A DNA stretch of 64,000 nucleotides from Lytechinus pictus (GCF_037042905.1 NC_087263.1:14818001-14882000); one strand, 5' to 3'. Positions 410 to 56,124 are shown, numbered from the stretch's first letter. The notes: generated by a model not told the origin, from the sequence alone. Made by a program: numbers and translations.

Positions 410-3400
410 GTAAAATCTTATAAGGCTTACGTCATTTTCGTGAATCAGGGGTGGGGTTTAACTGTGACTTTGCTAACAAGGTATGTAGGGTACGTGACGC
501 AGGTGAGTGTGGAGGCATATTGTTCTGTGTAAGGGCATCTAGGGTGTAACAAGCATACTTGTAAAGTGATATTGCACCGTGGAAGGGCATCTGGGGTGAA
601 ACGAGGGTGCCTGTAAGGTGACATTTCACTGTGGAAGGGCATCTGGGGTAACAAGGGTGCTTGTAATGTGGCATTGCACTGTGGAAGGCATGTAGGGTGA
701 GACAAGGGTGCTTGTACAGAGACATTGCACTGTGGAAGGGCATCTAGGGTGAAACAAGGGTGCTTTTAAGGTGACATCGCACTGTGGAAGGGAATCTAGT
801 GTGAAACAAGGGTGCTTGTAAGATTACATTGCACTGGATTGGCATTTAGGGTGAAACAAGGGTGTTTGTAAGGTGCCATTGCATTGTGGAAGGGCATCTA
901 AGATGAAACAAGGGTGCTTGTAAGGTGGCCTTGCACTGTGGAAGGTCATTTAGGATGAAACAATGGTGTTTGTAAGGTGACATTGCACTGTGGAAGGGCA
1001 TTTAGAGTGAAACAATGGTGTTTGTAAGGTGGCATTGCACTGTGGAAGGGCATTTAGAGTGAAACAATGGTGTTTGTAAGGTGACATTGCACTGTGGAAG
1101 GGCATTTAGGGTGAAACAAGGGGGTTTGTAAGGTGCATTGCACTGTGGAAGGGCATCTAAAGTGAAACAAGGGTGCTTTGTAAGGTGACATTGCACTGTG
1201 GGATGGCATCTAGGATGAAATAATGTTCTTTTAAGGTGACATTGCACTGTGGAAGGGCATCTAGGGTGATACAAGCAGGCCTGCAAGGTGGCATTGCACT
1301 GTGGAAGGGCATTTAGAGTGAAACAAGGATGTTTGTAAGGTGACATTGCACTGTGGAAGGGCATTTAGGGTGAAACAAGGGTGTTTGTAAGGTGCATTGC
1401 ACTGTGGAAGGGCATCTAAAGTGAAACAAGGGTGCTGGTAGGGTGACATTGCATTGTGGAAAGGCATCTAATGGGAAATAAGGGTGCCCTTAAGGTGACA
1501 TTGCACTGTGGGATGGCATCTAGGGCTAAATAATGTTCTTTTAAGGTGACATTGCACTGTGGAAGGGCATCTAGGGTGAAACAAGGTTCCTTTAAGGTGA
1601 CATTGCACTGTGGAAGGGCATTTAGGGTGAAACAAGGGTGCTTGCAAGGTGACATTGCACTGTGGAAGGGCATCTAGGGTGAAACAAGCGTGCCTGCAAG
1701 GTGGCATTGCAATGTGGAAGGGAATTTAGAGTGAAACAAGAGTGTTTGTAAGGTGACATTGCACTGTGGAAGGGCATTTAGGGTGAAACAAGGGTGTTTG
1801 TAAGGTGCATTGCACTGTGGAAGGGCATCTAAAGTGAAACAAGTGTGCTTGTAAGGTGACATTGCACTGTGGAAGGGCATCTAGAGTGAAACAAGGGTGT
1901 TTGTGAGGTGGAATTGCACTGTGGAAGGCCACTTAGGGTGAAACAAGGGTGCCGTAAGGTGACATTGCACTGTGGATGGGCATCTAGGGTGAAACAAGGG
2001 TGCGTGTAAGTTGACATTGCACTGTGGAAGGGCACTTTAATAGGGCGAAACAATACTGCTTGTAAGGTGATATTGCACTGTGGAAGGGTATTTAGGGTGG
2101 AACAAGGGTGCTTGTAAGATGACATTGCACTGTGGAAGGGCATTTAAGGTCAAACAAGGGCGCCTGTGAGGTGACATTCCACTGTGGAATGGCTTTTAGG
2201 ATGAAACAAGGGTGCCTGTAACGTGACAATGCAATATGGAAGGGCATCTAGAATGAAACAAGGGTTTTTGTAAGGTTACATTTCCACTGTGAAGGGCATC
2301 TATGGTGAAATAAGGGTGTTTGTAAGGTGGCATTGCACTGTAGAAGGGTAACTAGTGTGAAATAATGGTGCTTGCAAGGTGGCATTGCACTGTGAAAGCG
2401 CATCTAGGGTGAAACATGGGTGCTTGCAAGGTGGCATTGCACTGTGGAAGGGCATTTAGAGTGAAACAAGGGTGTTTGTAAGGTGACATTGCACTGTGGT
2501 AGGACATTTAGTGTGGAACAAAGGTGCTTGTAAGGTTACATTGCACTGTGGAAGGACATTTAGGGTAAAACAAGGGTGCTTTTAAGGTGGCATTGCACTG
2601 TGGAATGGCATTTAGGGTGTAACAAGGTTCCTTTAAAGTGACATTGCACTGTGGAAGGGCATTGAGTGTGAAACAAGGGTGCCTGCAAGGTGGCATTGCA
2701 CTGTGGAAGGACATTTAGGGTGAAACAAGGGTGCCTGCAAGGAGGCATTGCACTGTGAAAGGACAATTAGGGTGAAACAAGGGTGCTTTTAAGGTGACAT
2801 TGGACTGTGGAAGGGCATCTAGGGTGAAACAAGGGTGCCTGTGAGGTGGCATCGCACTGTGAAAGGGCACTTTGGTTTATTCAAGGTTTATTGCAGTATG
2901 ATATTGCACTGTGAAAGGATATTAAGGGTGATTGAAGGGTGACAGTCTGGTGATTCCAAATGAATATACTGCCCCCTTTTCCGAGATATTATATAGGCCT
3001 GTTGCTTAGAGGAAAAGTTTCAATCCTACACGATTTAGCTACCGCTTTTTCTCTGTGATCCTTTACTCCAATAAAAAAATTTGGGGTTTACAATCATGTC
3101 CGTTATATGTAAGGGGTATAAATGTAGTGTGTTATCATACAAGTGTGCATTACAAGACTACACATCTTAGAATGTTGCATTATGGGTTTAAGAACCTGGA
3201 TACATGTGAGGTGGTTCGCTGTTCAAGGATGCTGGTTTGTAATTGCTTCAAGGCATATAGAAAATATTTTATGACAAATTGATCTTTCCAATGCTCGGGG
3301 GAGCCAGTCAAAATGTATTGCTGTACACTTGCGTGACCAAATTATTTCCAAACACCCCCTAAACGAGTTTTTCTCTGTGTGCAAAATTCCAAATTCAAAT

Positions 3401-6400
3401 TCAAATTCAATTCGGTTTTATTCAACAATACTCATCAAAAGTCCGAAGACTAACAATGTGAGTTTACAATAAAAAACACATAAAAGAGAAAATAAATAAA
3501 TACATAACATGCAGTGACCATTAAAGAGAAAAAAATATATATATCATGTTTAAATATGCAATAACAGTATAACAACAAATTGAATGAGCAGATGCATGTA
3601 ATGAGACACATTTAATTTATATATTTTAAAAAAAAAAGGACAAATAAAGACAGGCAAGCAGGTGAGGAGCAAGAAAGGGGAGCAAGCATAAAATAACCCC
3701 CTAAACAAGTTTTTCGCGGGCTTTATTTACATAGTTTGGCTCCTAAACAAGTTGTCGCCAGAATGGGGAAAAAGCTTGTGGGAAAAAAGCATACCCTATT
3801 TACACGTTCGGCTAGTCTTAAAAAAAAAAGCTTTGAAAAAATTTACATACCGTTTGACCCCGCGATTGACCATTGACCAGTCTTTCAAAACTTCCCTTTT
3901 CTTTGAAAATCAGTGTTTTTGATTCTCTTAACGAGTGCACACGCAGCACGCGTCCAAAACTGAAAAAAATATCCCTTTAAACGCGTTTTTTGGGTCACGC
4001 AAGTGTACAGCAATATATTTGACTGCCCCCCTGGCTTGTGATAAATGGTATTCCTGATTTTCATGATTAATTGTTGTAGTCAAAGCTATCAATTAAGATA
4101 AAAATGTTCTGCGACAATTGCTTTGTGTTACGGGCCCCTGTCTCTATCTTATAGGTTTGTTCTGAAGACCAAGGTAACCTTCTATGCAGACTGCGTTGGA
4201 GGTGGTCCAGCAAGAACAGAATACCAATGGACCGTAAATAAGAACAACTTTGAAGGGAAGATTCTTGGCGGAATTACAGACAAGAACAGGCTGACCATAA
4301 TCCCCTATGGGTACACCTTTACTGGTGAGTATTTTCACTCCTAATTGGCCATTAAAAAAGCTGATATGGTAGTTGAATCCTTGATAGTCTTCCCGCCTAT
4401 CATTACTATTTTGTGAAAGCTAAATATGATGTAGACCATGTGTGTGTTGTAGACAGGTTGCCAACAGTAAATGGGTTCCTGTATCGTTTGTCTTTATCCA
4501 GTAGATGCTGAATCAGCAATGTTCACAGCTGTGGAAAGAGCAGAACAGTAGAAGTAGGTTTTAGAATCCTCTAAAAAGCATTCCCAGTTTCAAGATAAAT
4601 AAATGCCAATTGTTGTAACGATTTCAAAATGTGTTCGAACAGAATCCAATGAAATTATTAGTGTCTGTTTGCATAAATAAAAAGTGTGATAAAGGATAAT
4701 TTATGGAAGAAATTGTGTAATTGCTGAGAAATTAGAAAATTAAGTGCACATTCAAGTAAAATTGTCAGATCCTTTTCCTAGCAATAATATCACACAGTCC
4801 CACTTGTGCTTATCTGTGTTGGCGACCTTCAGTGTGATCGTCTTTCAGCTTATATTTCATGATTTCACAAAGTTCAGTTTATGTAACTGTACCAGATCTA
4901 GATCCCCCCTGATAAAGTGACAATTAATTTTGTATGTTACAAACTTTCTTTTGAAATAAGTGTTTACTGCAAATTTTTTTTGTATCTTTGATATATTACC
5001 TACCTGGCAGGTTACATTATGCAGCAAATCATATGTTGTGTGACAGATGAATGATGATTCATGGGGGATTTGTTTTCTCTTGCACCATATCTCCTCTCTC
5101 CCTATATAGCATGTTTTAGTACATATTTCTTCCAGTCTTCTTCCTTAATCGTAACAGTGTTTCCAATCCAGCTCATCAGGGCAATCATGGACAATTATTT
5201 AACTTTTTCCAGTCAGGGAACTTGATCAAAATATCTCAAATTAGGAAAGTCAGGGAATATTATTACCCCCCCCCCCCAAAAAAAAAAAAGAGAAAGAAAG
5301 AAAGAAAGAAAAAAAGAAAAAAAAAGAGCAATTCCATAAAATGATCAACCTTTTTATACTTATACGTCCAACCCCAATTTTTCTCAAGTTTGGTCCTTTG
5401 AGAACATTACAGACTGTCAAAAGAACAAGAAATCACTTTATGAAGGTCCCACATATAGCGGATCGGACATACATACTTTATGGAACTGCCCAAATCTGAA
5501 ATATGAAATAATTGCCATATTTAGTGATACTTTATCATGGAAAAGTTGGGGAAAATTTAGAGAACATTCAGGAATTTTGGTTTCTTGAAATACTGGTATA
5601 CCTAGCTGAAAGAGTTTATTGAATAGATTTGATGGAGACACACCTGGAGCAGTCTTCTTTTCAAATTTGATACATCAAAGCTTCCATACCTGTCTCAGGA
5701 GGGGAGGTTATATTTTTTCTCACGATACTGCCCATTCAAAAAGAATGCATTTATTTGCCGTTTGTGATGTTTAACTGATTGAGGATCACTTTGTTCAGAA
5801 GCATTTGCTATTAATATAAGTGTCAATACAGACTAATTTTACTTGTTCAGAAGCATGCAGTGCCAGTTTGATGATCACTTTATGGCATGCCTGTTCAGAA
5901 GCATTTCAATATACGTCTAATTCGTGTGCACACCTTTCTTTTCATTGAAGATGACAATTACGATGTGACCTTCACCGTAGAAGCGACCTTCGAAGGTATT
6001 GCGACACCACTTACAAGCAGCATCACCGTACGCTTTGCTCCATCAGATCTTGTTGCAACGATAAAAGGAGCCAGCCGAAAAAGTGTCGGTGTGGACGTGG
6101 GGCCTGTGTCGCTTGATGGTAGCTTGTCATACGATCCTGATATACCGCGGAATGAAGACCAAAGTTCTGGGTTGACCTACTTATGGACTTGTGTACAGGT
6201 AAATTATATTGATAAAATGTTAAATGCAGTATTATGGTTTTTTTAATTGTGATACAAAATGATTACAAAGAGCGACAATGCCTTGGATAATTGTTGTGCC
6301 CTTATTAATTTTTCCCATCGGCCTCGGTGGTGTGATATAAAAAAAACTATGCCGTACATAAAATATTATTTATCAAAAGCGTACCTCACCTGGGATGAGT

Positions 6401-9400
6401 GCAAAACATTATGCATATAAATTTCTTACTGGAGGAAATTATCATGACTCTGGTTATACCTGCTGGCTGATTGCAAGAAACTAACCACCAATTGCAAATC
6501 AATCATTTTATGTTTAGCAATTAATTACAAGTTTGGAATTGATTGCTAATTTGCTTCTAGCTGGAAATAACAAATGTAAACTGATTGTGTTACAGCTATT
6601 GATTGCATACTTGAATGTAAAATTGCAGTAGAAATTGATTTGGACTTGATTACAAGTATTTTCTTTATATCCCCTACGAGATGCGAGTGAGAACTATACC
6701 ATAACACTTGCAATAACCAGACTGTTCACTTGCTTCCGTCTTTTCAGGGTGCAGATCAGCTGTGTATAAATGCGCAGGATGGTTCCAACTTTCCACCCGC
6801 CGCTGACAGCACGTCAGCAGTCTTGAACGCCAATGCAAACTACATGGTCGCTGGAGAGACCTATACCCTAACGTTGGAGGTTTCATCCGGGAGCAGACGT
6901 GCAAGTACTAGTGTAGTCATAGAGGCATTGGCTGGAACCCCACCTCCGGTATGTGGCGTGTCATTCAATTAAAACAATAATATTCAACTTTAAGTAGCAC
7001 TTAATACATCGCAGGTATGTCTTTACACCACCATACTTAATATGTTATCACCCCATTCATCTGTGGCATGCCTGCATACATTGTATTCAGTGTTTCTTGT
7101 TGGTGGGGTAGACCTGACCTTCAATATTCTGCATGAAAATACCCTTTCACTTAATAATCTGAAGTGACGTATGGTGATATTTTGGTTTAAAAATTATGAT
7201 GTTGAATGGATCTTTATTGAAGAATAAGGAGTGCTTGGAAGCATACTGTAGATATTTGATATCTTGGCAAATTTGGGGATACAAAATAATGTTTCAAAGT
7301 GTAGCAGGAAGTTAGGTAGGTGTAGTGGAAACATCAAATGTTTTATTATATCAAATTATTGGCAGTCAAGCTAGCCGGGACTCTTGATTGATGATAGATT
7401 GAAATTATCATTATTATTATTACTATTGTTATTATTTGGTTGGCATCATAATAATAATAATAATAATATGTCCATTTATATAGCGCAGTTACTATTTGCA
7501 TATACTCAACTGTGCTTTGATATCTGTCACACCTGAATAAATTCAAATGGACATAACTTGTGTCGAATGGTGACTCTCTCAACTCACTACTGTAAAACTA
7601 AATAAATGACCATGGAAGACAATTATTATTTAGTTCAACAAATAAAATATGTTTAGTTTTATTACTCGTTTTCCGGCTTCAACTTCCAACATTTAAATTC
7701 AATCTTCTGGTTTTGGTGGACCAGAGTAAACAGAAGATAAACAATAATAACAAAAATATATTCAACTCGAAGGAAGTTACACAATAGTATATATATGGTT
7801 ACAAAACAATGCTTTAAGTCTCTGGAGGGTATAAATAAAATAACCCACTTTAATCAACTGTTGCTTCCTGCTAAAAATTCATGAGGAGTAACGAATGAGT
7901 AAAACGAGCGATGATAAACGACCATCATCAGATCTTGTCAGCGAGGGTGCTGTCCGTTCTTGGTGGGTGCCCTCTAATAAACCTTTACTCCTACTCTTGA
8001 CTGGTCTGGTCAATGGCTGAAAATGAGCTGCCAGACTTCTTTACTTCTGAAGAACCACTGGGTGAACTCCCAGGTAGATGAAGAAGAACCCATCTACAAT
8101 TAAACAATTTCCAAAACTTAAAAAGTCTATGGAATACATATAGGACAATAAACCATAACATAATAGGTTATCTATATTCAAGGAAACATCATTTCCCTAG
8201 CTTAATTCAAGTATTCAAGTATAATCTAGAATGACATAATTCGGTCATTGAAAAGAAAGCATCATCATTTCTCTTAAATCTAACATTTCATACAAAGAAA
8301 TTCCATGACATGAGAAACACTTTCCATAATCCATTAATGCTTAGGAAAAGCAAAGTTTCTTATATATTTTAAGAATATCATTTTAAGACCTTTCAATATT
8401 TCAACAGATGGAATTCTTGTTGACATATAATAATCTTTTAATGAAAAAATATAGTTAGCATCTTTCACATCTCACATTTTAGAGGTTTTCTTTGACCTTT
8501 TGTTATTCTCAATGAATAATAAAAATCCAAGACATAAATGAGACAAAAAAACAACTAAACTTACAGTTTGACTGGGATGACTAAATGCAGGAAATCAGGA
8601 ACAGGCCTCCATGTTGGTTTAGTGAATCTTGACTCTGGAATATAGTTTTATTGCAGCGCAAGTGTTTGGCTTAAAACTCTAACCCTCCATTTCCAATCAC
8701 CCAACTGGACCCAAGGACCAATAGGTCCTGCCTGTGTGAAAGCTGTGCAGATAGTGAGGTACTCCTGCTAAAACAGGCAACCCACCCAGTTAAAAAATGC
8801 TGAGTATGTTAATTACAATTAAGTGCGATGGAGCCTAACCACTGAGCCTAACTACTCACTATTCACTCCAGAGCACTATTGTGCATTACATAATACAAAG
8901 GATTAAGAATACACTTGAGGGGGAAGGTTGAATCTCTAACAATATCATATTATCATATTATTACCCCGGCCGTAGCTGAGCCGCCATATTAATAGGTGCT
9001 AAAGCGTTCAAGGAAGAAATCCTACTGGGTACCCATTTACCTCACCTGGGTCGAGTGCAGCACAATGTGGATAAATTTCTTGCCGAAGGAAATTACGCCA
9101 TGGCTGGGATTAGAACCCACAACCTTCTGCTTCAAAGTCCAGAGACTAATCCACTGGGCCACAATGCTCCAGATCATCTGTGCCTGGGAGATGAAAACCA
9201 AGTTAAATCACTATGACCCGCAGGTCTCTCATCCCGATATAACTGATTGGATGAAAGTTGACCACTACTCTGGGGTTTCCCCCTACTCTTATGTGAATAG
9301 TGCAGTGGGGGTTCTTGACCTGCAAAGATGGTGACTCTCCTCTACATGCGTCTGTAGCTATAATACTGATTATGGTTATCATAGATTTTCATATATGTTG

Positions 9401-12400
9401 TCTTCAGCATTATATTATAATCTTCTTTGGCATCATCATCATTCCACATTACTTTCATTTATTGTCATTGTCAATACAGGTAACGCTAGCTATTCCGGTA
9501 TTTCGCTTCTTAAGCCTGTCGTCAACAGACGCTGTTCCATTAGTAACCGTAATCGGTGATAGGACTCGGCCTGTGACAGATATCAGTAGTATTTCAACGT
9601 TCTGGAGACTTTTGGTCGATGATGGTAATACTTTTAAATCAAACGTCCACTTTTGATAAATTTTGATTAAGTTTATAATGCAGTAAGGTAAAATTCAAAT
9701 TAAATGTTCTTTGCTAAATAGTGTTTTTGTTCGGGTATGTTACAAAAATGGACCCAGCTTGATGGAATAACCCATATGTACTAACTTGGATTGAAAATTT
9801 AATCAAAAACATGCATGCACGAAGAGACGGGTAAGATGTTATTGGTTTACATTTCATCCTTAGTCTCTGTTTTTTTTTTCTCATTTCATGTCTTATTTTT
9901 TCAGATGAAGACGTTGGCTATGAATTCGACACTGGAATTCTGGTTGAAAGGTCGTTTGGGATCATCCAGAGGTCGGAGATAGCTGCAGGTAATATTAAGA
10001 ATGTAAAAGTTATTCTGCTTGTAGCATATGAAATAATAAGTAAGGTCAAAGGTCGTTTCAGATCCTTCAGAGGTCAGAAATAGCTGCAGGTAATATCATA
10101 CAGAATGTAAAAGTTATTCTGCTTGTAGCATATGAAATAATTAGTAAGGTCAAAGGTCGTTTGGGATCCTTCAGAGATAGCTGCAGGTAATATCACTCTA
10201 GTTATTCTGTTTGAAGCATGTAAAAATTATTAAGGTCAAAGGTCATTTGGGATCATTCAGAGGTCAGGTAATTATCATTGAGAATGTGAAAGTCATTCTG
10301 CTTGTAGCTTATGAAATAATGATTAAGATCAAAGGTTGTTTGGGATACTTGAGAGATCAGAGATAGCTGCAGGTAATTATCATTGACAATGTGAAAATAA
10401 TTCTGCTTGTAGCATATAAAAAATAATTAAGGTCAAAGGTTGTTTGGGATACTAGAGAGATCAGAGATAGCTGCAGATAATTATCATTGACAATGTGAAA
10501 AGAATTCTGCTTGTAGCATATAAAAAATAATTAAGGTCAAAGGTTGTTTGGGATACTAGAGAGATCAGAGATAGCTGCAGGTAATTATCATTGACAATGT
10601 GAAAAGAATTCTGCTTGTAGCATATAAAAAATAATTAAGGTCAAAGGTTGTTTGGGATACTTGAGAGATCAGAAATAGCTGCAGGTAATTATCATTGACA
10701 ATGTGAAAATAATTCTGCTTGTAGCATATAAAAAATAATTAAGGTCAAAGGTTGTTTGGGATACTAGAGAGATCAGAGATAGCTGCAGGTAATTATCATT
10801 GACAATGTGAAAAGAATTCTGCTTGTAGCATATAAAAATATAATTAAGGTCAAAGGTTGTTTGGGATACTTGAGAGATCAGAAATAGCTGCAGGTAATTA
10901 TAATTGACAATGTGAAAATAATTCTGCTTGTAGCATATAAAGAATGATTAAGATCAAAGGTTGTTTGGGATACTTGAGAGATCAGAGATAGCTGCAGGTA
11001 ATTATCATTGACAATGTGAAAAGAATTCTGCTTGTAGCATATAAAAAATAATTAAGGTCAAAGGTTGTTTGGGATACTTGAGAGGTCAGAGATAGCTGCA
11101 GGTAATTATCATTGACAATGTGAAAAGAATTCTGCTTGTAGCATATAAAAAATAATTAAGGTCAAAGGTTGTTTGGGATACTTGAGAGATCAGAAATAGC
11201 TGCAGGTAATTATCATTGACAATGTGAAAATAATTCTGCTTGTAGCATATAAAAAATAATTAAGGTCAAAGGTTGTTTGGGATACTAGAGAGATCAGAGA
11301 TAGCTGCAGGTAATTATCATTGACAATGTGAAAAGAATTCTGCTTGTAGCATATAAAAAAATAATTAAGGTCAAAGGTTGTTTGGGATACTTGAGAGATC
11401 AGAAATAGCTGCAGGTAATTATAATTGACAATGTGAAAATAATTCTGCTTGTAGCATATAAAGAATGATTAAGATCAAAGGTTGTTTGGGATACTTGAGA
11501 GATCAGAGATAGCTGCAGGTAATTATCATTGACAATGTGAAAAGAATTCTGCTTGTAGCATATAAAAAATAATTAAGGTCAAAGGTTGTTTGGGATACTT
11601 GAGAGATCAGAGATAGCTGCAGGTAATTATCATTGACAATGTGAAAAGAATTCTGCTTGTAGCATATAAAAAATAATTAAGGTCAAAGGTTGTTTGGGAT
11701 ACTTGTGAGGTCAGAGATAGCTGAAGGTAATATCATTGACAATGTGAACGTCATTCTGCTAGTAGCATATAAGGTCAAAGGTCGTTTGGGATCCTTCAGA
11801 GGTCAGAAAAAGCTGCAGGTAATATCAATGAGAATGCAAAATTTATCCGCATGTATATAGCATATAATGTAAAAGTCATTCTGCTTGTAACATGAAATAA
11901 TCAGTAAGGTCAAAGGTCGTTTGGGATCATTCAGAGATAGCTGCAGGTAATATCACGCATAATATAGTCATTCTGTTTGTACCATATAAAAAAAATCAGT
12001 AAGGTCAAAGGCTGTTTGGGATCGTTAAGAGATCAGAGCTAGCTGCAGGTAATATCATTCATGATATATAAGTCATTCTGTTTGTAGTATAATCAGTAAA
12101 GTCAGAGGTCAGAGATAGTTGCAGGAAATGTGAAAGCCATTCTGCTTCTAGCATATAAAATCAGTAAGGCCAAAGGAAGGGGACACTCATTCTAGATGAA
12201 TGTGCCACCCATTTCAGACCTTAAATTCAAGTTCCAGTGCATTGCAATTTTAGAGGCCTCAGAAACGTCCATCTTTGAGACCCCCAAGGTTGTACTTGTA
12301 TGACACTTCCACCTGAAAATTGCACCCATGTGCTATTTTGCAGTGGAAATGCATTATGTCATGTACGTTTAGATGATGTATTCTAATTACTGGTTCATTC

Positions 12401-15400
12401 CAGAGCACCAACCTTTGTTAAATTCCGATGCACAAACTTGTCGATAAAAGAAGCAATTAAAGAAATAAATATAGGTATATAAAGGCCTATACTCTAGAAA
12501 GAGGGTTCAATTGTACCATGGTAAAGAAATAATATTCCTCATTCATATAGCGCTAAATACATCGAAATGACGTCTCTAAGTGCTTTACAGATAAATTATT
12601 ACCCCTGTCATCGGATCCTTCAATGCCCGCATACAATGTATCCACCTTCTCCACTCCCTGGGGAGCATTCCAACAAGAGTTCTAAGACTTAATTGCTAGG
12701 CATACTTCATAGGCTTTCGCATCCTACCGGGTACCCATTTAACACCTGGGTGGAAAGTGGCAAATTGTGGATTGACGCCTTGCCAAAGGACGATAGGCCA
12801 TAGTGGGATTCGAACACACGACCCTCTGATTACAAGGCGAGAGTCAGAACCGCTACACCACGGCGCTTCCACAAGAAAAACCGTGACTATGCAGATTAAT
12901 GTTTATAGTTACATTTATTTCATTGCTCATTCACAGCTTTTTGAGAATATGGCCAAAAAGTTTATATTAGGGCCATTCACATTGCAAGTGAATTATCGTG
13001 AAGATTCAGTCATTGCTGGGTTTTGTGCAGGATTTTCTATCATCGTGAGTAAATTACTTGCATGTTTTCTAATGTGAATCCAATGATCCAAAACTCTAGC
13101 TACGATGTTTTGTTTATCCACATTTATCCACATTGTGCTGCACCCAACCCAGGTGAGGTGAATGGGTACCTGGCAGGAATGTATTCCTTGAAATGCCGAG
13201 TGCTGGAAAGGCTGCTTGAGCTACAGCCGGGGTAATAATATCCAAGTCCTTGGGAAGCGCATAGAGACATTATTCATGCGTTATACAAGAACTGACTATA
13301 AGTATTATTATTGTTCAAATTTTGCATAGCAAGCTAGGTGCAGGTAAATAAATCCATTTCGCAAGTACACTCATGTCCAAAAGATTGCAGTGTTTTGCTC
13401 TAGTGTGAATCAAGAGGAAGAAAGATCATGATAAACTTGCGAATCATATCTTCGCGGTCTTTCATGGCGCTATTGATTGTGTAATAGTTTCGGAATTGCT
13501 CTATTTTCTTGCTTGACAGGTGACCTTGACCCTGGGCAGCTGTACAACGTGCAGGTTGAGGTCGACTACGGACAGGCCCAACCTGCTATAGCCCAGTTAG
13601 AACTCCAAACACCCAGTGGCGTATCGTCTTGCGACCTTAGTGGAAACGATTACACGGAACTTGATGAGGTATAGTACTAGAAAGAAAGGGACAGAGGGGG
13701 CGGGGTGGGGGGAGTGCAGGGAGGGAGAGGGGGAGGGGATGGGGGAGGAAGTGAAAGGTAGGGATAAGGAAAGAGCAAGGGCCCTCGCAGAAATGTTTAA
13801 GCTTGCACCAAGCTTGCTTGCCAGTGGCTAGCCAAATATGAATTCTAACGGCTAAAAATAAAACAGCCAATGACTACCACACTTCTTGCGGAAGAGGTTT
13901 ACAGTACACCATGTGTAAAGTCCTGGAGGGACTGAGATAAGGAAAGTGGATAGAATTGAAAAGGCAGAGAAAGTGGAGGTTTGAAAGTAGAGTATTCTTT
14001 TCGGGCAGGATGACTGTCCGTCTCCTGAAGATGGACAGTCAACCTGCCCGAAACGTCAAGTCTAGTCTCCTGCTACTACTCTGTTCACCGACTCAAGCCA
14101 GCCTTCTCTCACCTACTCAAGCCTTCAACTCAAACCTACTACTCAGCTTTCCACTCCTGGTTTACAGTCCTTTTAATGACTACACTTATTTCAAAACCTA
14201 TTTCAAACCTTTTCTCGCCTGTCCAATTCACCTCCAATTCTATCCACTTATCTCAGTCCCTCATGGAATTTACACTTGGTGTACTTTAAACCTCTTCCGT
14301 GCTTGCTCATACCACCATGCGAACCTTCAATCATTACCACACTTCCGTTATATTGCAATGTGATACTTGCATTACATTATTAGGATAAATCACCTTACCA
14401 ACCCTTTACCAAAAGCTTTAGACAGGATTTGATAACTTCCAACACTTTGAGGCAGTTCTTTAGGTGGTTTTAAACCGCCTCGATCACAAGAATCCCCGTT
14501 AAATTACGAGAACATTTTTAGGCTAAAAAATACCCATTAATTATTCCTGCATTCAGACCGCCCCGAAACATACACTTCGGGATAAATTCCTGAAGTTAGG
14601 AGCATGCGCAGTATGGTCTAATAAGCAGGCAAGGCGCGAGATTCAAAACTACTAGCCCAGCAGCCACCCACGCCGCCGCACCCAACGACACGCTGGGCTA
14701 AAAGTTCCCGTAATTTGCTTTCACATCGCCAAAATACCTGCGACCTTGGAAAAATCCCGCGAAAGTTCTCGTTATTTCGCCAAGTACCTACTATTTAGCG
14801 GGTATTTTCTTTCGGGGAAATTACGCGTAGTTTGCTTTCACATTACCAAAATACCTGGTATTTTCTGATCGGGGTAAATTTCCCGATCAGAGAATACCTG
14901 GAACTGACGAACTTCGAGGCGGTCTGAAACCACCTTTTGACTATTCTAGCATAAGATCAATTGAGAAGATCATGATCAACAATTGAATGATGGGTTTCCT
15001 TGACAACCAGTAGAAGCGTTTAAAGTGGTAGCATTGGATTACCTGAGGTAAAATTTATGGACACAACATATTTTGCTTCTGTGAACAATTACTCCAGGCT
15101 TTACTTTGTGTTTGTCGTTAAGGATCTTGGTAGGGTATAGTTTCAGTTTAGTTTATTTCCATAATTCATATACAGACATTTACATGCTTGACATGAGTAT
15201 AACATAATTATCTTGAGTTGAAATAAATGGTTCTTGAGACAGAAATTATACGCAATAAGAATTTAAATCAGTGAAAATGGAGGGGCCTAAGTTGAAAGCA
15301 GAGCTTGTGAGTTATAGGTGATAAATCCAGGGTTAACATTACTCATTTGATTAGTGTGTGGAATTGATAGTGATCTAAAGAAAAAAAAGTCGTTGGAAAT

Positions 15401-18400: not shown

Positions 18401-19770
18401 TCGCTTGTGGATGCCGAGATCAATAAGGGTAAATAAATCCATTGTATTTTTTACAATTATATTGATCAGTGGCGGATCCAGGCAGGGGCGGATCCCCCCC
18501 CCCCCCCACCAAAAAAAAATTATGGGGATATCTCTTACATAAGCAAGTGAGGACCTTTTTCTTTGTTTTTGTGCTTGCAAAATTTTTCCTTGAACCAAAT
18601 GACCTAAATGAACCCCCCCCCCCTTTTTTTTCTTGCTTGTCACATTTTTCTTGGAACAAAATAACCCAAATTTTGTAGTGAAAAACTGTTGTTATTTTTT
18701 TTGCTTGTAAATTTTTTTGTACGAAAATGCCACCCCCCTTTAGAATATCCTGGATCCGGCCCTGATACTGATGGAAAAATATATATGGATATATATATCA
18801 AGCGCCATGAGCACCGAAAGGTGGACCTGTGCGCTATATAAGTAGCCACCATTATTATTATTATTATTATGGAGGTGTGTTATGGCTCGATCAGTGGATA
18901 AGTCTCTGGACGTTGAACCATGGATTTCCATATAGTTTATAGTTGAGGTTGATCGGATCAATCATGAATCTGTGTAAGACAGGCCTAAACGAGTGAAATA
19001 CATTGTAGGCGACTTATTTGCTGCTCTACTGGTTCTCAATGCATGGCCTGGGTTTGATCTCCTTGAAGGCCAGCAAAACTGCATGATCAATAACTAAATT
19101 ACTCCATCTCATGATTTAGTTTTGCCCGTAATAAGATAAATTCCTTGGTTTGTAAATTACAACCATTTTTACAAACATTAATTTGAGGATTATTGTTAAT
19201 TTACTTCAAACATTTCATTGCACTTGGAGCGGTGTGGCCCAGTGGATTAGTCTCCAGACTCTGAAGCAGAGGTTCATGGTTCAACTCTCAGCCATGACGT
19301 AGTTTCCTTCAGCAAGAAATTTATCCTCGTCGTGCTGCACTAGACGTAGGTGAGGCAAATGGGTAGCTGGCAGGCATCTGTTCCTTAAAATGCGTGTGTA
19401 CTGTAAGTAATTACCGCCACGTAGCAAAAGCCGGGATAATAATGTCCAAATCCTTTGGAAGCGTGTGGAGATAATCATAATGTGCTTTGCACTATACAAT
19501 AATTGCTTATAACTTTTATTATTTTTACTCTAGGTGACATACTTTCTGCTCTACGAAACCTCAACCACCTTGTGAGTTCCCTTATCGAGGGCCAGTCAAG
19601 GAAACGAAGACAAACCGTCTCGATAGACCAGTCAACGACAGATCAATTCGCATTGTTCCAGGATGCTGCTTCGGCTCCAGACATTGACGAGGATACCGCG
19701 GGTAATCTCATTGATGAAGCTACTTTCATCAACGTTGCTGCCTTGCCAACAGAGGATCTGAGTAAGTGAT

Positions 19771-22800: not shown

Positions 22801-25800
22801 ATGGTTGTGATGATGGTGATGATGGGGATACTGATGATTATGATGATGATGGTGGTGATGGTATTGATGATACTTGTGATGATGCTGACAACAATATCAA
22901 TAACAACCAAAATAATGAGGATAAACAATCTTAATTATAGTTACAGTATAGGCCTACTACAATAAAATCATTCCACAACCAAACATGCATCTGCATTTGC
23001 ACACACTATTTCTGTTCTGATTTAAATGAAAAACAAGTGGAACGCCTCTGGCTGTCTCACTTGCATCACGCGATTCAATGTAGCAGCAATGCAAAACTAC
23101 TATAAAATGATTATTCACAAAAAACACCTTTCATATAATAATACAATACTACGTTCACTGACATTTGACCTTGATCATGTGACCTAAAACTTTTCAGTGA
23201 TACTTGATTACCCCTATATCCACATTTTATACACTATATCTATAAATTTGAAAGTTATGACAGCAATCTAATAATTACCTCTAAAATGGCCAAAGTATGA
23301 CCTTAAATGACCTTTGGTCATGTGACCTGAAACTTGCATGAGATGTTCAGTGATAATAGATGACTCTTATTTCCAAGTTTTATGAACTATATACCAATAT
23401 ACTTACAGAGTTATGATGGTAATTCAACAAATACCCCCAACATGGCCACCAATGACCTTTGACCTTGGTCATGTGACCTGAAACTCGCACAAGATGTTCA
23501 GTGATACTTGGTTACTCTTATGTCCACGTTTTATGAACTAGACCAATACACTTACATATATATGATGGTAATTCAAAAAATACCCCCAACATGGCCAAAG
23601 TTCATTGACCTCAAATGACCTTTGACCTTGGTCATGTGACCTGAAACTCGGACGGGATGTTCAAAGATACTTGATTACTCTTATGTCCAAGTTTCATGAA
23701 TCAAATCCATAAACGTTCAAAGTTATGATGGTAATTCAACAGATACCCCCCCCCCCACATGGCTAAAGTTCATTGACCTTTGACCTTGGTCATGTGACCT
23801 GAAATTCGCAGAGGATGTTCAGTGATACTTGATTACTCTTATGTCCAAGTTTTATGAACTAGACCAATAAACATTCAAAATTATGATGGTAATTCAACAC
23901 ATACCCCCAACTTGGCCAAAGTTCATTGACACTAAATGACCTTTGACCTTGGTCATGTGACTTGAAACTCAGGCAGGATGAGTTATTCTGTCATTTCAAA
24001 AACTTAACCTTCAGTTAAGATTTGGTGTTGACGCCGCCGCCGTCGGAAAAGCGGCGCCTATAGTCTCACTCTGCTATGCAGGTGAGACAAAAACTGATCA
24101 TAATAATATTAGGGCATGTCTGAAGGTATATAATTCTTCTTCCAAAACTCCTTTTGCACAGATATACACTGTGGACTTGTGGAGACGGCACAGGAGACTG
24201 TCAAGGAATTCTTGTTCAGATGAATCAGTATGCTACCGGAGTCGATCCGTATTCTACAGATAATGATGATCGTGACAATCTAGCATCCTCCATTTTGGAG
24301 ATCACTTTCTACGATCAATGGTCCGAAAATTGTAAGTAATTGTGCGTTGGCTTTTTTTTCAGTTTTACTGCAAACACCTACAATTGGCAATTGAAGTATG
24401 ATTTACTCTTGCCATTCTCAATGACTTTTCTTGAAGCATTACATTTGTGGAGGTTCTGCCCTGCTCCACCATCCACCTTATTCACTAATTCATATCGTAA
24501 AGTTTTATTTCCTCAATTTTTTAATCCAATAAATAAAATCAGATGATGTTTGAAGGTTTGGATGGTGTTATGAACAATTGCAAAAGTGGTTTACGGCGGA
24601 CCATGTGTGAAGTCCTTAGCCGCCTAAGAGTAATGCGGATAATTCAATAAAAATTGCATTCACAAACACCGAAAAATATCCGCATTATTTTTACGAGCGC
24701 CCGTCCTGAAAAAGGCGGATAATCGTCATGACAACTGGACACGCCCCCTCCGATGCGGTTGTGTTGGAAAAGGGTGACCTTGTGACCGCACCATGGCAAT
24801 TATCCGCATTATTTGGAAATGCGTTCATAAACTCAAAATCTTGTCCCGATGCTGCTATTATGCGGATAATTGCAGCATCAAAATAATGCGGATAACTCTG
24901 GTCCTCCTCTGATTTTACGACCAAATTATGCTGCTATTAGCCACATAATTGGGTTTATGAAAGGGGTATGAGATAAAAGTAAATAGAGATAGAGGTGAAA
25001 TGGAAAGGTGAGAAAGTGGAGGTTTGGAAGTAGAGTATTCTTTTCGGAATGAATGTAGTCCTTAAACGGATAGTAAAACCAGGAATGGAGGGAAGAGTTG
25101 AGTAGAAGGCTTGAGTAGGAGGCTGGTTGGGTGGGAAGGATGAGAGAGGCTTGAGTAGATGAGAAGACTTACTTTAGTCGGTGAATGGAGCAGTGGAAAT
25201 CAAATCAATTGCGCATATGTCTTAAAGGTCAATTTTATGAATCACTTGACATGTAAGACCTTTTTCGAAAACCACATTTTAAGGCCTATCATTATGTTCA
25301 ATGATGTAAGTTGTAAATTATTGATGTTTCTTTCTCTGCAGTGGATGTGGTGGAAGTGGCGTCACTGACCGAGCCCATAAGTATCAATATGCATCTCAGT
25401 GCACCAGAACCAGAGAGGTCCTACGAGTGCGCCTTCTGGGACAACACAACTAACCAATGGAGTAGGACGGGGGTGGAGACTGTGATGACAACAACGACGT
25501 CGGTTGAATGCCGGACTTCTCATCTCAGCGTCTTTGCTGTCTTTGCCGGTGAAGAAATCGTCCCTACCAGCGGACCGTCTCCTGTGAGAGGTAAGCCCGA
25601 CATGTCTATCCTTGGCCTTGTTTCACATTTAAAGAATCATATTTATAAGCTTAGAGGTGGGGCCTGAGACAGAATTTATTCTGTTGAATCGCAGCCCCAA
25701 GAAAAATAAAGCTCAAGTTCCAAATGCATACTTCAGTTGAGAATTAAAGTGAATTTGACTTTTTTAATTCGCATTTGATTGTGGCATATTGACACAGAAA

Positions 25801-40794: not shown

Positions 40795-42004
40795 GTAATG
40801 TGTGTACATACGTGCTCTTATTGAGTGTATTCCCTCTCAGAGTCATACTGTATGCTCAAGCCGTGCACATGTAACCGTACTGGCCCTGCCTGTACAATAA
40901 GCCAGTTCACGGTTAGCTCATGATCAACTTTTCTCAAATGACCTTTGTGATTTTTCATTAGGATAAGCACTATCATTTCCAAATGTAGATGTTGCTTAAG
41001 CTTTACCGGTAGAGTATTCAAATTCTAAGAGCAAATGGCATTGTATAGACCAGGTGACTAGAATAGTACATCAGGGATAAAGTTTGGAAATCTGTTTTAT
41101 TGTCTGCCTTTGGCACATTTGACTATTGTTTAGGCTACTGTCAAATACCAGTGATTATGAAGGCTCTATTTATTACTCTTCAGCTTGGATGATATAAAAT
41201 GAATATTTTGAAAGGAATACATGAATAATCATCAAATCACAAATGCCTATGTCAGTGAATTTGAAAGCCACCTTCATGGTTTATCTCAAATGACCTTTTT
41301 CTGCTCGTGCGCAGTTTACAACCGTGAACAGGCTTATTGCCTACATGTACCTCACATAACTTCTTTATCGTGTTTATCACCTTGTACATGTACTTGCTGT
41401 ACCTGTGTACTAGTGACATTCTTAATACTGAAGAACATATTACCAAGTACTGTATAACCTTTCACACCCTCATTCTCTTAATTTGCCACCCCTCGCACCA
41501 AAATTGCTCAAAAAAGGTTGATTCTTGACAAAGCTGGATCAGCGTACATGCTTCAAGGAAACCAAATCCCAAGAAGAGAAGCAATCTTATTGGAAAGAAT
41601 AAAACAAGAGGAACAATTTAAAACAAGTTTCATCAAAATCGATTATGAAATAGGCAAGTTATGGATGTTTGAAAAATCTTGTTGTACTTTCTATGGGTAT
41701 CCTCAAATTGGCAAACATGCTTCAAATTGGCTGATTTTGTGGTCAAATTTTCAGATTTTCCCCTTTATTTTACATATTTCACATCATTTTCTCCTGACCT
41801 TGACATATGTGGTGTGAATTATATTTTCCCATGACATATATGTTAGGCCCAGAAGGAGGCAAGATGCAATTTGAAAGATGGGGAAAATCTGAAAAACTGT
41901 GTACAAAACAAATGGAGAGTTGTCCACAAAATCAGCCATTTTGAAGCATGTTTGCCAATATCAGGATCCCTATAGAAAGTACAAGATCTTTTAATTCATC
42001 TGTG

Positions 42005-45000
42005 AAAATGGTCTAGCCAGTCTCCTACACGATGCCGGCTAAAAGGAGCTGTATACCTTCATGACAGATGATGGTTCGCGCACCTCTTTGATTGATGGTT
42101 TCTTAGTACCAGCTCACTCTTCCAGCCTCTTCAGCAAACAAGCAACCCTTAAAGAGCATCCACTTAACACATCTGACCATCGGTCAGTTCTTGTATCACT
42201 TCACCCTCCTCACCAATCTGGTATAGTCTTCTCCTCATCATCCTCTGTTCCCATTGCTGAAGGAATTCAACGAATTTCCATCTCTTGGCCCTCTGACTCT
42301 GCTATCATCCGAGATAAATATACCATCCCTCTTGATTCCATGTCCTCCAAGATCTTTCTCAGGTTCGACTCTCTGGAGCTTTCCCCCATAGACATTGACT
42401 CCATCTTCAATATCCCCCAGAAGAATATGCTTACTCTCTCTCTTGAACTTCCCCACAAAGTTAATTCAAAGAAGATGTCTGGCAAACAAGAATGGTCACA
42501 CGCTGTGAGAGAAGCGTACGCCATCTCCCTCTCTACCTGGAAAGCGTGGAGGAATGACGGCAAACCCACAGAAAACAACAACTTACTCAGATCCAAGTAA
42601 CTTGCTGCCAAGAAGAACTTCTGCAAATCCCTTAGGCAGTCCTCTGCTAAGGTTAAACTCAACAAAAGACTGGAGATTGAAGGTACCCAATCTCGTAACG
42701 CTCATATTTTCTAGTCAACAAGCGAAAATCAAGTAATGCTCCAACTCAAGATCTAGCCTACTAAGAGTATGACAACACACGCTTCACAGGAGAGCAGGTC
42801 ATTCAAGGATGGCATAGATACTTCTCCATGCTCTCTGCCTGCTCTCTCAACCCACCTGAAATTCATGTAGAAGACCCAGACATCAATCATTCCCCCTCCG
42901 CCTCCTCCCAGTCCCCTAGTCCCTGTCACTCCAATGTAGCTTCCTTGTCACACTCCCCCCCCCCCTCCATTCAGGTACCACCTCCACTCAACAAGTTACT
43001 CTAAACCTGGAAGATTTAGACAATGCAATATCCTTACTCAGACTCAAGAAAGCCCCTGGATCGGATAGCATTACCTCCAATCATGTCAAGCATTCAGGAC
43101 CTATTACCCGCAGACTGCTTCTACTTCTCATTCTATCTTGCATCAGAATTTGATACTTCTCCTCCTCTCTGAAAGATGCCCTCGTTTATTCCCTTGCACA
43201 AAGGCAAAGGTTAACCCATACATGATCCATCTAGTTACCGGGGTATCTCCCTTACCTCGTGCATGTCCAAACTGCTGGAGAATGTTCTGAACCCCCATAT
43301 TGAAATGCCTCTCTCTTCTGTCAATGTTCGGGATGAGCTACAATTCGGGTTCCAGCCAGGAAAGTCGTGTACTCTACTTCTCTCGCCCTCAAACTCTCAA
43401 TCGAACTCAATATGTCTGCTATGAACCCTATCTATCTTGCCCTCTGGATGCAAATAAAGCCTTCGACTCAGTTTCTCATAGTGGCCTCTTCTCAAAACTT
43501 CAAGACACACCAATTCCAACCTCTGTACAATCTACTTTGAACGCCCTCTACCAAGGTGCTTCAAGCCATGTCACCTGGAATGGTTCTGTCAGTTCCTTCA
43601 TTCCATTAAACAAGGGTGTCAGACAAGGAGGAATACTCTCTCCCACTTTGTACAACGTATTCGTTGATGACCTCATCAAGACTCTCCGAGACAAGGGGCT
43701 TGCCTGCACCTTTCAGAATCGATACGCATGTGTAATAATCCTTGCTGATGATGTTGCCCTTCTCGCAAGTTCTCCCACTGAACTTCAGCAAATGCTGAAT
43801 GTCAAAGATGAATATGCCTCTCATTGGGAATACTCTATCCCTCCAAAAGTGCCATCCTCATCTTCAAGTCAAAGCGCAGCATCCACCCATCCTGCCAATT
43901 CTTCATTGACGATGACAGAATCATAGAGGTCTCTCATCATCTCACCTTGACATCACCAATCAACCATCTCTTATGACCACACTCAACACAAAATCACCAA
44001 GGGATACAACACCCTCTTCGCCATCATCGGTAGCAACAGCAGCAATAACCTCTTCCTCCCCCACACCCTTGTGAAGCTCTGGAAAACTTTCTGCCTACCC
44101 CGAATGACGTATTGCTCACAGCTCCTGTGTTTCACTCAATCAACAAACTTGATTCTGCCCAACATTCCCTTTTCAAGAAACTCTTGGGCCTACCGAGATC
44201 TGCCCCCAATATCTTTATCTTCCTGTTAACCGACCTACTTCACCTCTTCCGCGAGATTGAACTGAACACTTTCCTTCTGATAGGACAGCCCTTCAACATT
44301 GATCATAGTAGATTTGAATTTCACTCATTCCTCCATGCCCTCTCCACCAGACTCCTACTATCATCTATTGGAATAAGCTGCTCTGAGTACAACCTTCCCT
44401 CACTCACCTCTCTCATATCTGAAGATTTCTCATACAACCGCTGGAAAACTCTGTGCAGGAGTAAAGTGTATGATACCCAAATGGAAGAAGCCAGAGTGTG
44501 CATTGAGAAATTCTCATCCCTCAGCCTATGGAGTAACCTCTCAATGCTTCCCAAGATATCGTTACTATACCCTTCTTCACTACCAACCCATCTTCGATCA
44601 GCTGTGATTTTACGTGCTCAGCTGCTTACGTCCACTTATCCCACACAACGACGCATAGTCACCACCGGGAAGAGCCCAGACCCAACCTGCAAGCTCTGCT
44701 CTCTAGAGGAAGAAACCACTACCCACTTTCTTGCCTCATGTCCAGTCTTCTTGGCGCAGCGTCTGGACCTACTACATCATGTTGAGAACCTTGACTTGCC
44801 TGCATTCATCCTCAATGATTTCACTGGAAATGACCCCCCTCATCCTCGCATCCTCCATCCTCTTCCCCTCACACTCCCTGCCCTCCTCCTCTGCTTCCTC
44901 TTTGACATGTCACTGCTTAAGATGCATCTTAAAAATTCTCATGTCGACAGCACCATCTAGAAAAGACCTGAATTCTTTAACACTCTGCGGCTTGCCGCCG

Positions 45001-55714: not shown

Positions 55715-56124
55715 ATCACCATCATGAACATCATCACATTATCGTCATCATCACCATCATCACGAACATCATCATCATCACAAACATCAGCGTCATTATG
55801 AACATCATCATCACAAACAGCGTCATTACGAACATATTCACGAACATCGTCATCATCATGAGCATCACCCGTCATCATGAACATCATAATACTCACGAAC
55901 ATCATCACCATAATCATCATCAGCANNNNNNNNNNNNNNNNNNNNNNNNNNNNNNNNNNNNNNNNNNNNNNNNNNNNNNNNNNNNNNNNNNNNNNNNNNN
56001 NNNNNNNNNNNNNNNNNNNNNNNNNNNNNNNNNNNNNNNNNNNNNNNNNNNNNNNNNNNNNNNNNNNNNNNNNNNNNNNNNNNNNNNNNNNNNNNNNNNN
56101 NNNNNNNNNNNNNNNNNNNNNNNN
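55715..56124. repeat. (CAT)n degenerate microsatellite running into an assembly gap (N 55926-56124)
   Basis: directly visible. Confidence 0.95.

What the first reader, a model, noticed from the sequence alone, without database searches (positions are those of the whole stretch)
9946..12175. Satellite array amplified from a coding exon end: ~21 tandem copies of a 5' splice site
Seen: the first unit is the last ~43 nt of REJ exon 6 plus its donor (gatagctgcag|gtaat) and ~60 nt of intron, and the unit repeats about 21 times. Each unit also carries an acceptor-like ttctgcttgtag, so the array reads as repeated 40-nt GT..AG plus 64-nt pseudo-exon modules. Central copies are homogenised, with a ~520-bp (5-unit) higher-order period (the same variant at ~10900 and ~11420), and the edges are diverged. 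Inference: the spliceosome must choose the true donor among ~20 near-identical decoys. The array could cause frameshifting pseudo-exon inclusion, stepwise splicing, or copy-number-dependent skipping of the frame-preserving 84-nt exon 6.
Basis: partly seen in the sequence, partly recalled or inferred. Interest (0 to 1): 0.7.

Follow-up and report, generated by a model that had tools for sequence, protein, structure and literature searches.

The report
Splice-donor minisatellite in urchin REJ gene
In a painted sea urchin REJ-domain gene, the last 42 bases of a coding exon plus its splice donor are repeated about 22 times in the following intron; this is a real but already known kind of repeat, and it is probably harmless because cells normally use the first donor.

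Summary
Window 9947-12175 holds 22 head-to-tail units of about 104 bp. The first unit is the last 42 nt of an 84-nt coding exon (9905-9988) plus its GT donor. Nineteen decoy donors follow, identical to the true one from -3 to +5. Thirteen core units are 92-100% alike. A 521-bp five-unit block is duplicated with 2 mismatches.

The gene is Lytechinus pictus LOC129282805, with a REJ domain, a GPS motif and one membrane span. The exon lies inside the REJ domain and is kept in the L. variegatus ortholog. All retrieved public protein models that cover this junction join 9988 to 13520.

The 'acceptor-like' motif scores no better than a random AG, so the pseudo-exon idea is weak. Any later donor would bring in a stop codon (10081-10083).

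This kind is known in human F7, LMNB2, PDGF, CBS and IFI6, where the first donor, or the first two or three, are used. This scan has already noted two more such arrays in the same genome, in VPS13 and TMEM209.

Two things are new here. An inverted sister array lies 14 kb upstream in the same gene. A 24-nt core is shared with a dispersed repeat.

RNA reads could not be obtained, so the effect on splicing is untested.

Verdict: new member of a known kind, low to moderate interest.

The parts
9480..9624 (+). Preceding coding exon (aa 1760-1807 of LOC129282805), 145 nt, ends in phase 1
   Evidence: Exact match of public protein P0002 to the translated window, flanked by AG and GT
9905..9988 (+). 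Its last 42 nt are unit 1 of the array
   Evidence: P0002 and P0001 contain the peptide and join it to the next exon. It lies within the Pfam REJ match 1559-1996. The L. variegatus ortholog keeps 24 of 28 residues. Its acceptor scores 14.1 bits
9989..9994 (+). Authentic 5' splice site (cag|GTAATA), the most upstream of 20 donor-like sites
   Evidence: Junction used in all retrieved protein models that cover it. Own-gene matrix score 6.6 bits
9947..12175 (+). Minisatellite of 22 units of about 104 bp (86-135 bp at the edges), carrying 19 decoy donors
   Evidence: TRF, unit alignment, identity matrix. The intron part of the unit is found in the genome only in this array and its upstream inverted sister
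10331..11684 (+). Homogenised core, units 5-17, 92-100% identical
10643..11163 (+). First copy of the 521-bp five-unit higher-order block
   Evidence: Differs from 11164-11684 at 2 of 521 positions. A 208-nt stretch is 100% identical at offset 521
11164..11684 (+). Second copy of the 521-bp five-unit higher-order block
10081..10083 (+). First in-frame stop (TAG) if exon 6 reads through its donor. It lies upstream of the second donor, so use of any decoy donor gives a premature stop
   Evidence: The open frame runs 9835-10080, read against the sequence
12176..13519 (+). Non-repetitive remainder of the 3531-nt intron. The array fills 62% of the intron
   Evidence: No Rfam family and no tRNA in 9000-14000
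13520..13668 (+). Next coding exon (aa 1836-1885). Its strong acceptor scores 16.4 bits

Best explanation
This is an exon-boundary minisatellite. A segment of about 104 bp, made of the last 42 nt of a constitutive REJ-domain exon, its 5' splice site and the first ~60 nt of the intron, was duplicated in tandem. The first duplication probably occurred by slippage or unequal exchange at a short AAAGG homology that is still visible at both ends of the array. The copy number then grew to 22. The centre of the array is still turning over, as shown by a 521-bp block duplicated with only 2 differences. The edges have decayed. The spliceosome most likely uses only the most upstream donor. That donor is the one paired across an 84-nt exon with a strong acceptor, and it is the first to be transcribed. 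The 19 downstream copies are then removed with the rest of the intron. On this reading the array is a tolerated by-product of repeat expansion, not a regulatory device. Shown here: the anatomy, the gene identity, the place of the exon in the protein, and the junction used in public models. Inferred: the founding mechanism, exclusive use of the first donor, and neutrality.
For: The array anatomy and the higher-order repeat are established. Public protein P0002 (XP_063969909-11, L. pictus LOC129282805) maps at 100% identity exon by exon and joins 9988 to 13520. An older L. pictus model and the L. variegatus ortholog XP_041452569 have the same junction. The 90% identity cluster holds no variant that lacks the exon or extends it. 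The exon lies inside a single 438-residue REJ match, against 440 residues in two distant homologs. Its C-terminal residues complete a motif conserved in three distant homologs. The exon copy differs from the inferred founder unit at 2 positions, and both changes are synonymous (read directly). Decoy donors equal the true one, but the pseudo-acceptors score like random AGs. Any decoy donor would bring in a TAG stop. Published precedent: in F7, LMNB2 and PDGF only the authentic first donor is used, and in IFI6 and CBS two further sites nearest to it are also used (PMC1557585). The AAAGG motif appears at the array start (9947) and just after the last unit (12172-12176).
Against: No RNA data for this locus could be examined, so rare use of decoy donors, masked by nonsense-mediated decay, cannot be excluded. 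RefSeq models are computational, and I could not see their read support. The core decoys match the consensus slightly better than the true donor (T at +6). The 24-nt core that spans the unit junction also occurs in a dispersed repeat family, which a purely exon-derived origin does not explain. An inverted sister array in an upstream intron could make this locus behave differently from the human precedents.
Confidence: 0.75

Rival explanations
1. The array affects expression of the gene. Some transcripts use a decoy donor, most plausibly the second one 101 nt downstream. That extends exon 6, brings in a stop codon and sends the mRNA to nonsense-mediated decay. Array length or sequence would then tune the output of the gene, or favour skipping of the frame-preserving 84-nt exon.
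For: Decoy donors score 6.6-7.2 bits against 6.6 for the true one. In human IFI6 and CBS the two pseudo-sites nearest the authentic donor are used (PMC1557585). Read-through meets a TAG at 10081-10083, so such products would be unstable and missing from annotation. The exon is 84 nt, so skipping keeps the frame.
Against: No public model shows it. In the two human cases with similar long units, LMNB2 (100 bp) and PDGF (81 bp), only the authentic donor is used.
Confidence: 0.12
2. The two inverted arrays act together in the pre-mRNA. The upstream array (G000:C19:14813605-14814920, ending 29 nt before a 3' splice site) and this array (starting in exon 6) would pair into a long imperfect duplex. 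That duplex could loop out nine exons (1719 nt, in frame). The result could be back-splicing into a circular RNA, skipping of the exon block, or RNA editing or small-RNA production.
For: The arrays are 80.7% complementary over about 1.3 kb, and the homology is confined to the arrays. The predicted duplex energy is -232 kcal/mol for two units, against -61 for shuffled sequence. Both arrays abut the splice sites that bound the block. The splice phases make block skipping frame-preserving (read directly). Inverted intronic repeats flanking circularised exons are an established mechanism of circRNA formation (general knowledge, not tested here).
Against: There are no RNA data. The arrays are 14 kb apart, and co-transcriptional splicing of the introns between them may remove the upstream array before the downstream one is made. 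A duplex covering the exon-6 donor could just as well hinder splicing. The layout may simply record a local inverted duplication of repeat DNA.
Confidence: 0.08
3. The polarity is reversed. A repeat unit related to a dispersed family was present first, and the 3' end and donor of exon 6 were recruited from its first copy (exonisation of a repeat).
For: The 24-nt core that spans the unit junction matches the core of a dispersed repeat family of roughly 160-190 bp at 22 of 24 positions. The 22-nt search pattern taken from this core has 318 genome matches against 62 for the reversed control. The exon keeps 18 nt of this core. The residues it encodes (ERSFGI) fall in the least conserved, gapped part of the alignment with distant homologs.
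Against: The other 80 nt of the unit show no similarity to that family (score 15 against a shuffled mean of 16.5). No family copy flanks the array. The intron part of the unit occurs only at this locus. The last residues of the exon and its junction with exon 7 rebuild a motif conserved in distant homologs, and the REJ domain has normal length only when the exon is included.
Confidence: 0.07

Closest known systems
Human F7 intron 7 VNTR (37-bp minisatellite spanning the exon 7-intron 7 boundary; Borensztajn et al. 2006, PMC1557585)
   Same: The first monomer spans the exon-intron boundary, so the authentic donor is followed by identical pseudo-donors in the intron. In F7 only the most upstream site is used, and the pseudo-sites are functional but silent.
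   Different: F7 has 5-9 copies of 37 bp, of which only 4 nt are exonic. Here there are 22 copies of about 104 bp with 42 exonic nt, a five-unit higher-order structure, and an inverted sister array upstream. Donor usage has been measured in F7 but not here.
Human LMNB2 (10-15 repeats of a 100-bp monomer) and PDGF intron 4 (16-18 repeats of 81 bp), as summarised in PMC1557585
   Same: Unit length and copy number are almost the same, and the donor is reiterated in the intron. Only the authentic donor is reported to be used.
   Different: The genes and lineage are different. I know these two cases only through the summary in PMC1557585 and did not read the original papers.
Human IFI6 (6-16) and CBS exon-border minisatellites (Turri et al. 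1995 and Yang et al. 2000, cited in PMC1557585)
   Same: A minisatellite across an exon-intron border provides many donors.
   Different: Those units are short, and the two pseudo-sites nearest the authentic donor are used. Here any decoy donor would bring in a stop codon.
Two other arrays noted by this scan in the same genome (VPS13 intron, s1-294483; TMEM209 intron, s1-322058)
   Same: An exon end plus its donor is amplified in tandem in the next intron of an L. pictus gene. Both were judged a known kind, and first-donor use was reported for TMEM209.
   Different: The genes and units are different. No inverted partner array is mentioned in those notes. I did not re-examine those loci.
Inverted intronic repeats flanking circularised exons (for example Alu pairs in mammals)
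   Same: Two inverted, complementary repeat blocks lie in introns that bound a block of exons.
   Different: Here the blocks are locus-specific minisatellites, not transposons. One of them overlaps the exon and its donor. No circular RNA has been shown.

Membership tests
Exon-boundary minisatellite that reiterates a 5' splice site (F7 / LMNB2 / PDGF / CBS / IFI6 type) | Head-to-tail tandem array in an intron | tested here: met
   TRF finds a 104-bp period with 14.5 core copies at 95% matches. There are 22 units in all.
Exon-boundary minisatellite that reiterates a 5' splice site (F7 / LMNB2 / PDGF / CBS / IFI6 type) | The first monomer spans the exon-intron boundary of a real coding exon | tested here: met
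   Unit 1 is 9947-10047. The exon ends at 9988. The exon is present in public proteins of two species and lies inside the REJ domain.
Exon-boundary minisatellite that reiterates a 5' splice site (F7 / LMNB2 / PDGF / CBS / IFI6 type) | The donor sequence is repeated in the downstream monomers | tested here: met
   Nineteen decoys are identical to the true donor from -3 to +5, except one with A at -3. Scores are 6.6-7.2 bits against 6.6 for the true site.
Exon-boundary minisatellite that reiterates a 5' splice site (F7 / LMNB2 / PDGF / CBS / IFI6 type) | Only the most upstream donor, or the first two or three, is used | tested here: inconclusive
   All retrieved protein models that cover the junction use 9988, but no reads could be laid.
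Exon-boundary minisatellite that reiterates a 5' splice site (F7 / LMNB2 / PDGF / CBS / IFI6 type) | Copy number varies among individuals (VNTR) | not testable with these tools
   Only one assembly was available. The near-identical 521-bp duplication suggests recent turnover.
REJ-module proteins (PKD1 / sea urchin REJ family) | REJ domain | tested here: met
   Pfam PF02010 matches at E 3.4e-49 over residues 1559-1996 of P0002. Single exons also hit the model.
REJ-module proteins (PKD1 / sea urchin REJ family) | GPS cleavage motif followed by a membrane span | tested here: met
   Pfam PF01825 matches at residues 2257-2295. A hydrophobic stretch follows, encoded at 26258-26428.
REJ-module proteins (PKD1 / sea urchin REJ family) | PLAT domain and multi-span polycystin channel part (PKD1-type members) | tested here: not met
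   No such Pfam match was found, and the protein ends 72 residues after the start of its single span. The architecture is single-pass, like what I recall for suREJ1; that recollection was not tested.
Inverted-repeat-flanked circular RNA locus | Complementary inverted repeats in the introns flanking the exon block | tested here: met
   80.7% over 1.3 kb in inverted orientation. Duplex energy is -232 kcal/mol per two units.
Inverted-repeat-flanked circular RNA locus | Back-splice junction reads | not testable with these tools

The most novel reading that the evidence does not exclude
The array is one half of an inverted pair of locus-specific minisatellites. The pair brackets nine REJ-domain exons exactly at their outer splice sites. 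In the pre-mRNA the two arrays would pair into a duplex of more than 1 kb that drives back-splicing into a 1719-nt circular RNA, or in-frame skipping of the block. Array length would then set the ratio of products. This would be a repeat-length-tunable splicing switch built from the gene's own exon end.
Probability: 0.07. Interest if true: 0.6.

Novelty: new member of a known kind. Interest (0 to 1): 0.25.

Why it matters
Arrays of identical splice donors are natural experiments on how the spliceosome picks a 5' splice site. The human F7 array was used to argue for 5'-to-3' scanning. This array is a non-mammalian example with long units. Together with two others already noted in the same genome, it suggests such arrays are common and tolerated in sea urchin introns. 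That offers a comparative test of first-donor choice outside vertebrates. The inverted partner array adds a testable question about long intramolecular duplexes and circular RNA. Practically, the arrays coincide with a place where an older L. pictus annotation broke and scrambled this gene.

Tried and rejected

3. Paralogs. Searching the genome with the peptides of exon 5 and exon 6 found only the exons themselves, so paralogs give no polarity test.

4. Orthologs of the region encoded by exons 4-9. The word-based protein search found only the Lytechinus cluster.

5. Derivation of the whole unit from the dispersed repeat. Rejected: outside the 24-nt core the unit scores below shuffled controls, and no family copy flanks the array.

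6. A hidden RNA gene in the intron. No Rfam match at E 0.1 or better and no tRNA.

7. A larger inverted duplication that includes unique flanks. Rejected: the homology stops at the array edges.

8. TRF's 417-bp (four-unit) period. Rejected in favour of 521 bp, with 81.8% against 98.7% self-identity.

The full-length protein I used is the public sequence returned by the search (P0002).

Full report
**What is there**

Window 9947-12175 is a genuine tandem array. Tandem Repeats Finder gives a 104-bp period at 10265-11772 (14.5 copies, 95% matches, score 2709), with diverged copies on both sides. Cutting at the conserved unit start gives 21 units plus a 75-nt partial one.

- Units 5-17 (10331-11684) are 92-100% identical to each other. 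Units 1-4 and 18-22 are 39-89% identical to the rest and carry small deletions or insertions.
Self-identity peaks at a lag of 521 bp (98.7%). Blocks 10643-11163 and 11164-11684 differ at 2 of 521 positions. The marked variant units are numbers 10 and 15.
- CAGGTAAT occurs 19 times and AAGGTAAT once, so the true donor is followed by 19 decoys. Units 6 and 22 have lost the GT.

**The gene and the exon**

A search with the translation of one REJ exon (5947-6198) returned two near-identical public proteins. P0002 is L. pictus LOC129282805 (XP_063969909 to XP_063969911, 2384 aa). Its 90% cluster also holds the L. variegatus ortholog XP_041452569.

P0002 maps exon by exon at 100% identity onto the window and the 20 kb upstream of it. 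The window is G000:C19:14818001-14882000.

The protein has one continuous Pfam REJ match (residues 1559-1996), a GPS motif (2257-2295) and a single membrane span near the C-terminus.

It enters and leaves in phase 1. The preceding exon is 9480-9624 and the next is 13520-13668.

All retrieved public models that cover this junction join 9988 to 13520: the current and an older L. pictus annotation, and the L. variegatus model. The cluster holds no form that lacks the exon or extends it. These are computed models, and I could not see their read support.

**Direction of origin**

The exon is not an add-on.

- The REJ match is 438 residues long when the exon is included, against 440 in two distant homologs.
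- In an alignment with three distant homologs, the first half of the exon lines up with a shared G-Y/F motif. Its last residues, together with the start of the next exon, rebuild a conserved motif: hydrophobic, I, x, x, G, x, L, then Y-x-F/V-x-V.
- L. variegatus keeps 24 of the 28 residues.
- The exon copy differs from what all other old units share at two positions, and both are synonymous third-codon changes (read directly). This is weak evidence.
- AAAGG stands at the array start (9947) and again right after the last unit (12172-12176). This fits a founding duplication by slippage at a short homology, which is an inference.

**An unexplained detail**

The 24 nt that span each unit junction match the core of a dispersed repeat family at 22 of 24 positions. 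That family also forms the array at window 23193-23970.

- The 22-nt pattern taken from this core has 318 genome matches with up to 2 mismatches, against 62 for the reversed control.
- The remaining 80 nt of the unit have no similarity to that family (score 15, shuffled mean 16.5).
- The array flanks hold no family copy.
- The intron part of the unit occurs nowhere else in the genome except in the sister array.

I cannot explain this core. It keeps a minority reading alive in which part of the exon end came from a repeat.

**Splice signals**

I built weight matrices from 22 other donors and from 27 acceptors of this same gene (the acceptor set includes those of exons 6 and 7).

- The true donor scores 6.6 bits and the decoys 6.6-7.2, all within the range of the gene's real donors (5.2-9.9).
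- The 'acceptor-like' motif scores -4.5 to 2.2 bits against 4.3-16.4 for real acceptors. The core copy is at the 51st percentile of all AG dinucleotides in the first 30 kb.

The pseudo-exon picture is therefore weak, because the pyrimidine tract is short and sits behind a purine-rich run.

The only plausible error is use of a later donor. Unit 1 is 101 nt long, so the frame shifts and a TAG appears at 10081-10083, before the second donor. Every such product would carry a premature stop.

**A sister array**

The same unit occurs at only one other place in the 812-Mb genome: G000:C19:14813605-14814920. This is 14 kb upstream, in inverted orientation, in an earlier intron of the same gene.

- It has 12.5 copies of 105 bp with its own four-unit higher-order pattern.
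- It is 80.7% complementary to the window array over 1.3 kb, and the homology stops at the array edges.
- Its oldest units resemble exon 6 and the edge units of the window array most closely. It therefore looks like an old inverted offshoot.
- It ends 29 nt before the 3' splice site of the exon that encodes aa 1263 onward.

The two arrays thus bracket nine exons (1719 nt, a multiple of three) exactly at their outer splice sites. The predicted RNA duplex energy is -232 kcal/mol for two units against -61 for shuffles. Whether this pairing happens in vivo is unknown.

**Comparison with what is known**

Minisatellites whose first monomer spans an exon-intron boundary, so that the donor is reiterated in the intron, are described for five human genes:

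| Gene | Repeats | Donor use |
|---|---|---|
| F7 | 37 bp x 5-9 | Only the authentic donor |
| LMNB2 | 100 bp x 10-15 | Only the authentic donor |
| PDGF | 81 bp x 16-18 | Only the authentic donor |
| CBS | 15-20 repeats | Authentic donor plus two pseudo-sites |
| IFI6 | 25 pseudo-sites | Authentic donor plus the two nearest pseudo-sites |

F7 mutagenesis led to a 5'-to-3' scanning model for donor choice (PMC1557585).

The present array meets the structural criteria of this kind. Its donor usage could not be measured here.

This scan has already noted two further arrays of the same kind in this genome, in VPS13 (s1-294483) and TMEM209 (s1-322058). The second note reports first-donor-only reads. 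I did not re-check either locus.

**Limits**

The full-length protein used is the public one returned by the search.
- No stretch was taken for human, and none of the N runs in the window (47960-48115 and 55926-56124) lies near the finding.

**Verdict**

The most likely reading is a tolerated exon-boundary minisatellite with first-donor use (confidence 0.75). It is a new member of a known kind. Interest is low to moderate, raised slightly by the inverted sister array and by the recurrence of such arrays in this genome.

Noticed in passing
L012:5605-6920 (G000:C19:14813605-14814920), upstream of the window: An inverted sister array of the same unit: 12.5 copies of 105 bp with a four-unit higher-order pattern. 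It lies in an earlier intron of the same gene and ends 29 nt before a 3' splice site. Together the two arrays bracket nine exons (1719 nt, in frame).
   Followed up: partly
window 10043-10066 and every unit junction; dispersed copies such as L016-L034; window 23193-23970: The 24-nt core at each unit junction (AAGGTCAAAGGTCGTTTGGGATCA) matches the core of a dispersed repeat family of roughly 160-190 bp at 22 of 24 positions. The core contains a direct repeat of AGGTCA spaced by one base, which resembles a nuclear-receptor DR1 site (from memory, not tested). The rest of the unit is unrelated to that family.
   Followed up: partly
window 525-2869: A second large intronic minisatellite in the same gene (52-bp unit, 45 copies, 83% matches). 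It starts 115 nt after the exon that ends at 409 and is not derived from that exon's end.
   Followed up: partly
proteins P0001 (XP_054774643) and P0048 (XP_054774642): Older L. pictus gene models are split at the exon 6-7 intron and have the exons in scrambled order. P0048 starts in exon 7, and P0001 runs from exon 7 back to upstream exons. This suggests that the earlier assembly or annotation failed near the two arrays.
   Followed up: no
window 13506-13519 against the unit motif, e.g. 10609-10620: The true acceptor of exon 7 (ttcttgcttgacag) resembles the unit's pseudo-acceptor (ttctgcttgtag). This is probably chance among pyrimidine-rich sequences.
   Followed up: no
window 9030-9171, 13129-13193, 19238-19366; L012:8348-8514: Copies of a short dispersed element (78-86% alike) lie in several introns of the gene, on both strands.
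   Followed up: no
window 42000-45000: Long open frames with reverse-transcriptase-like sequence on the + strand, downstream of the REJ gene. This is probably a non-LTR retrotransposon.
   Followed up: no
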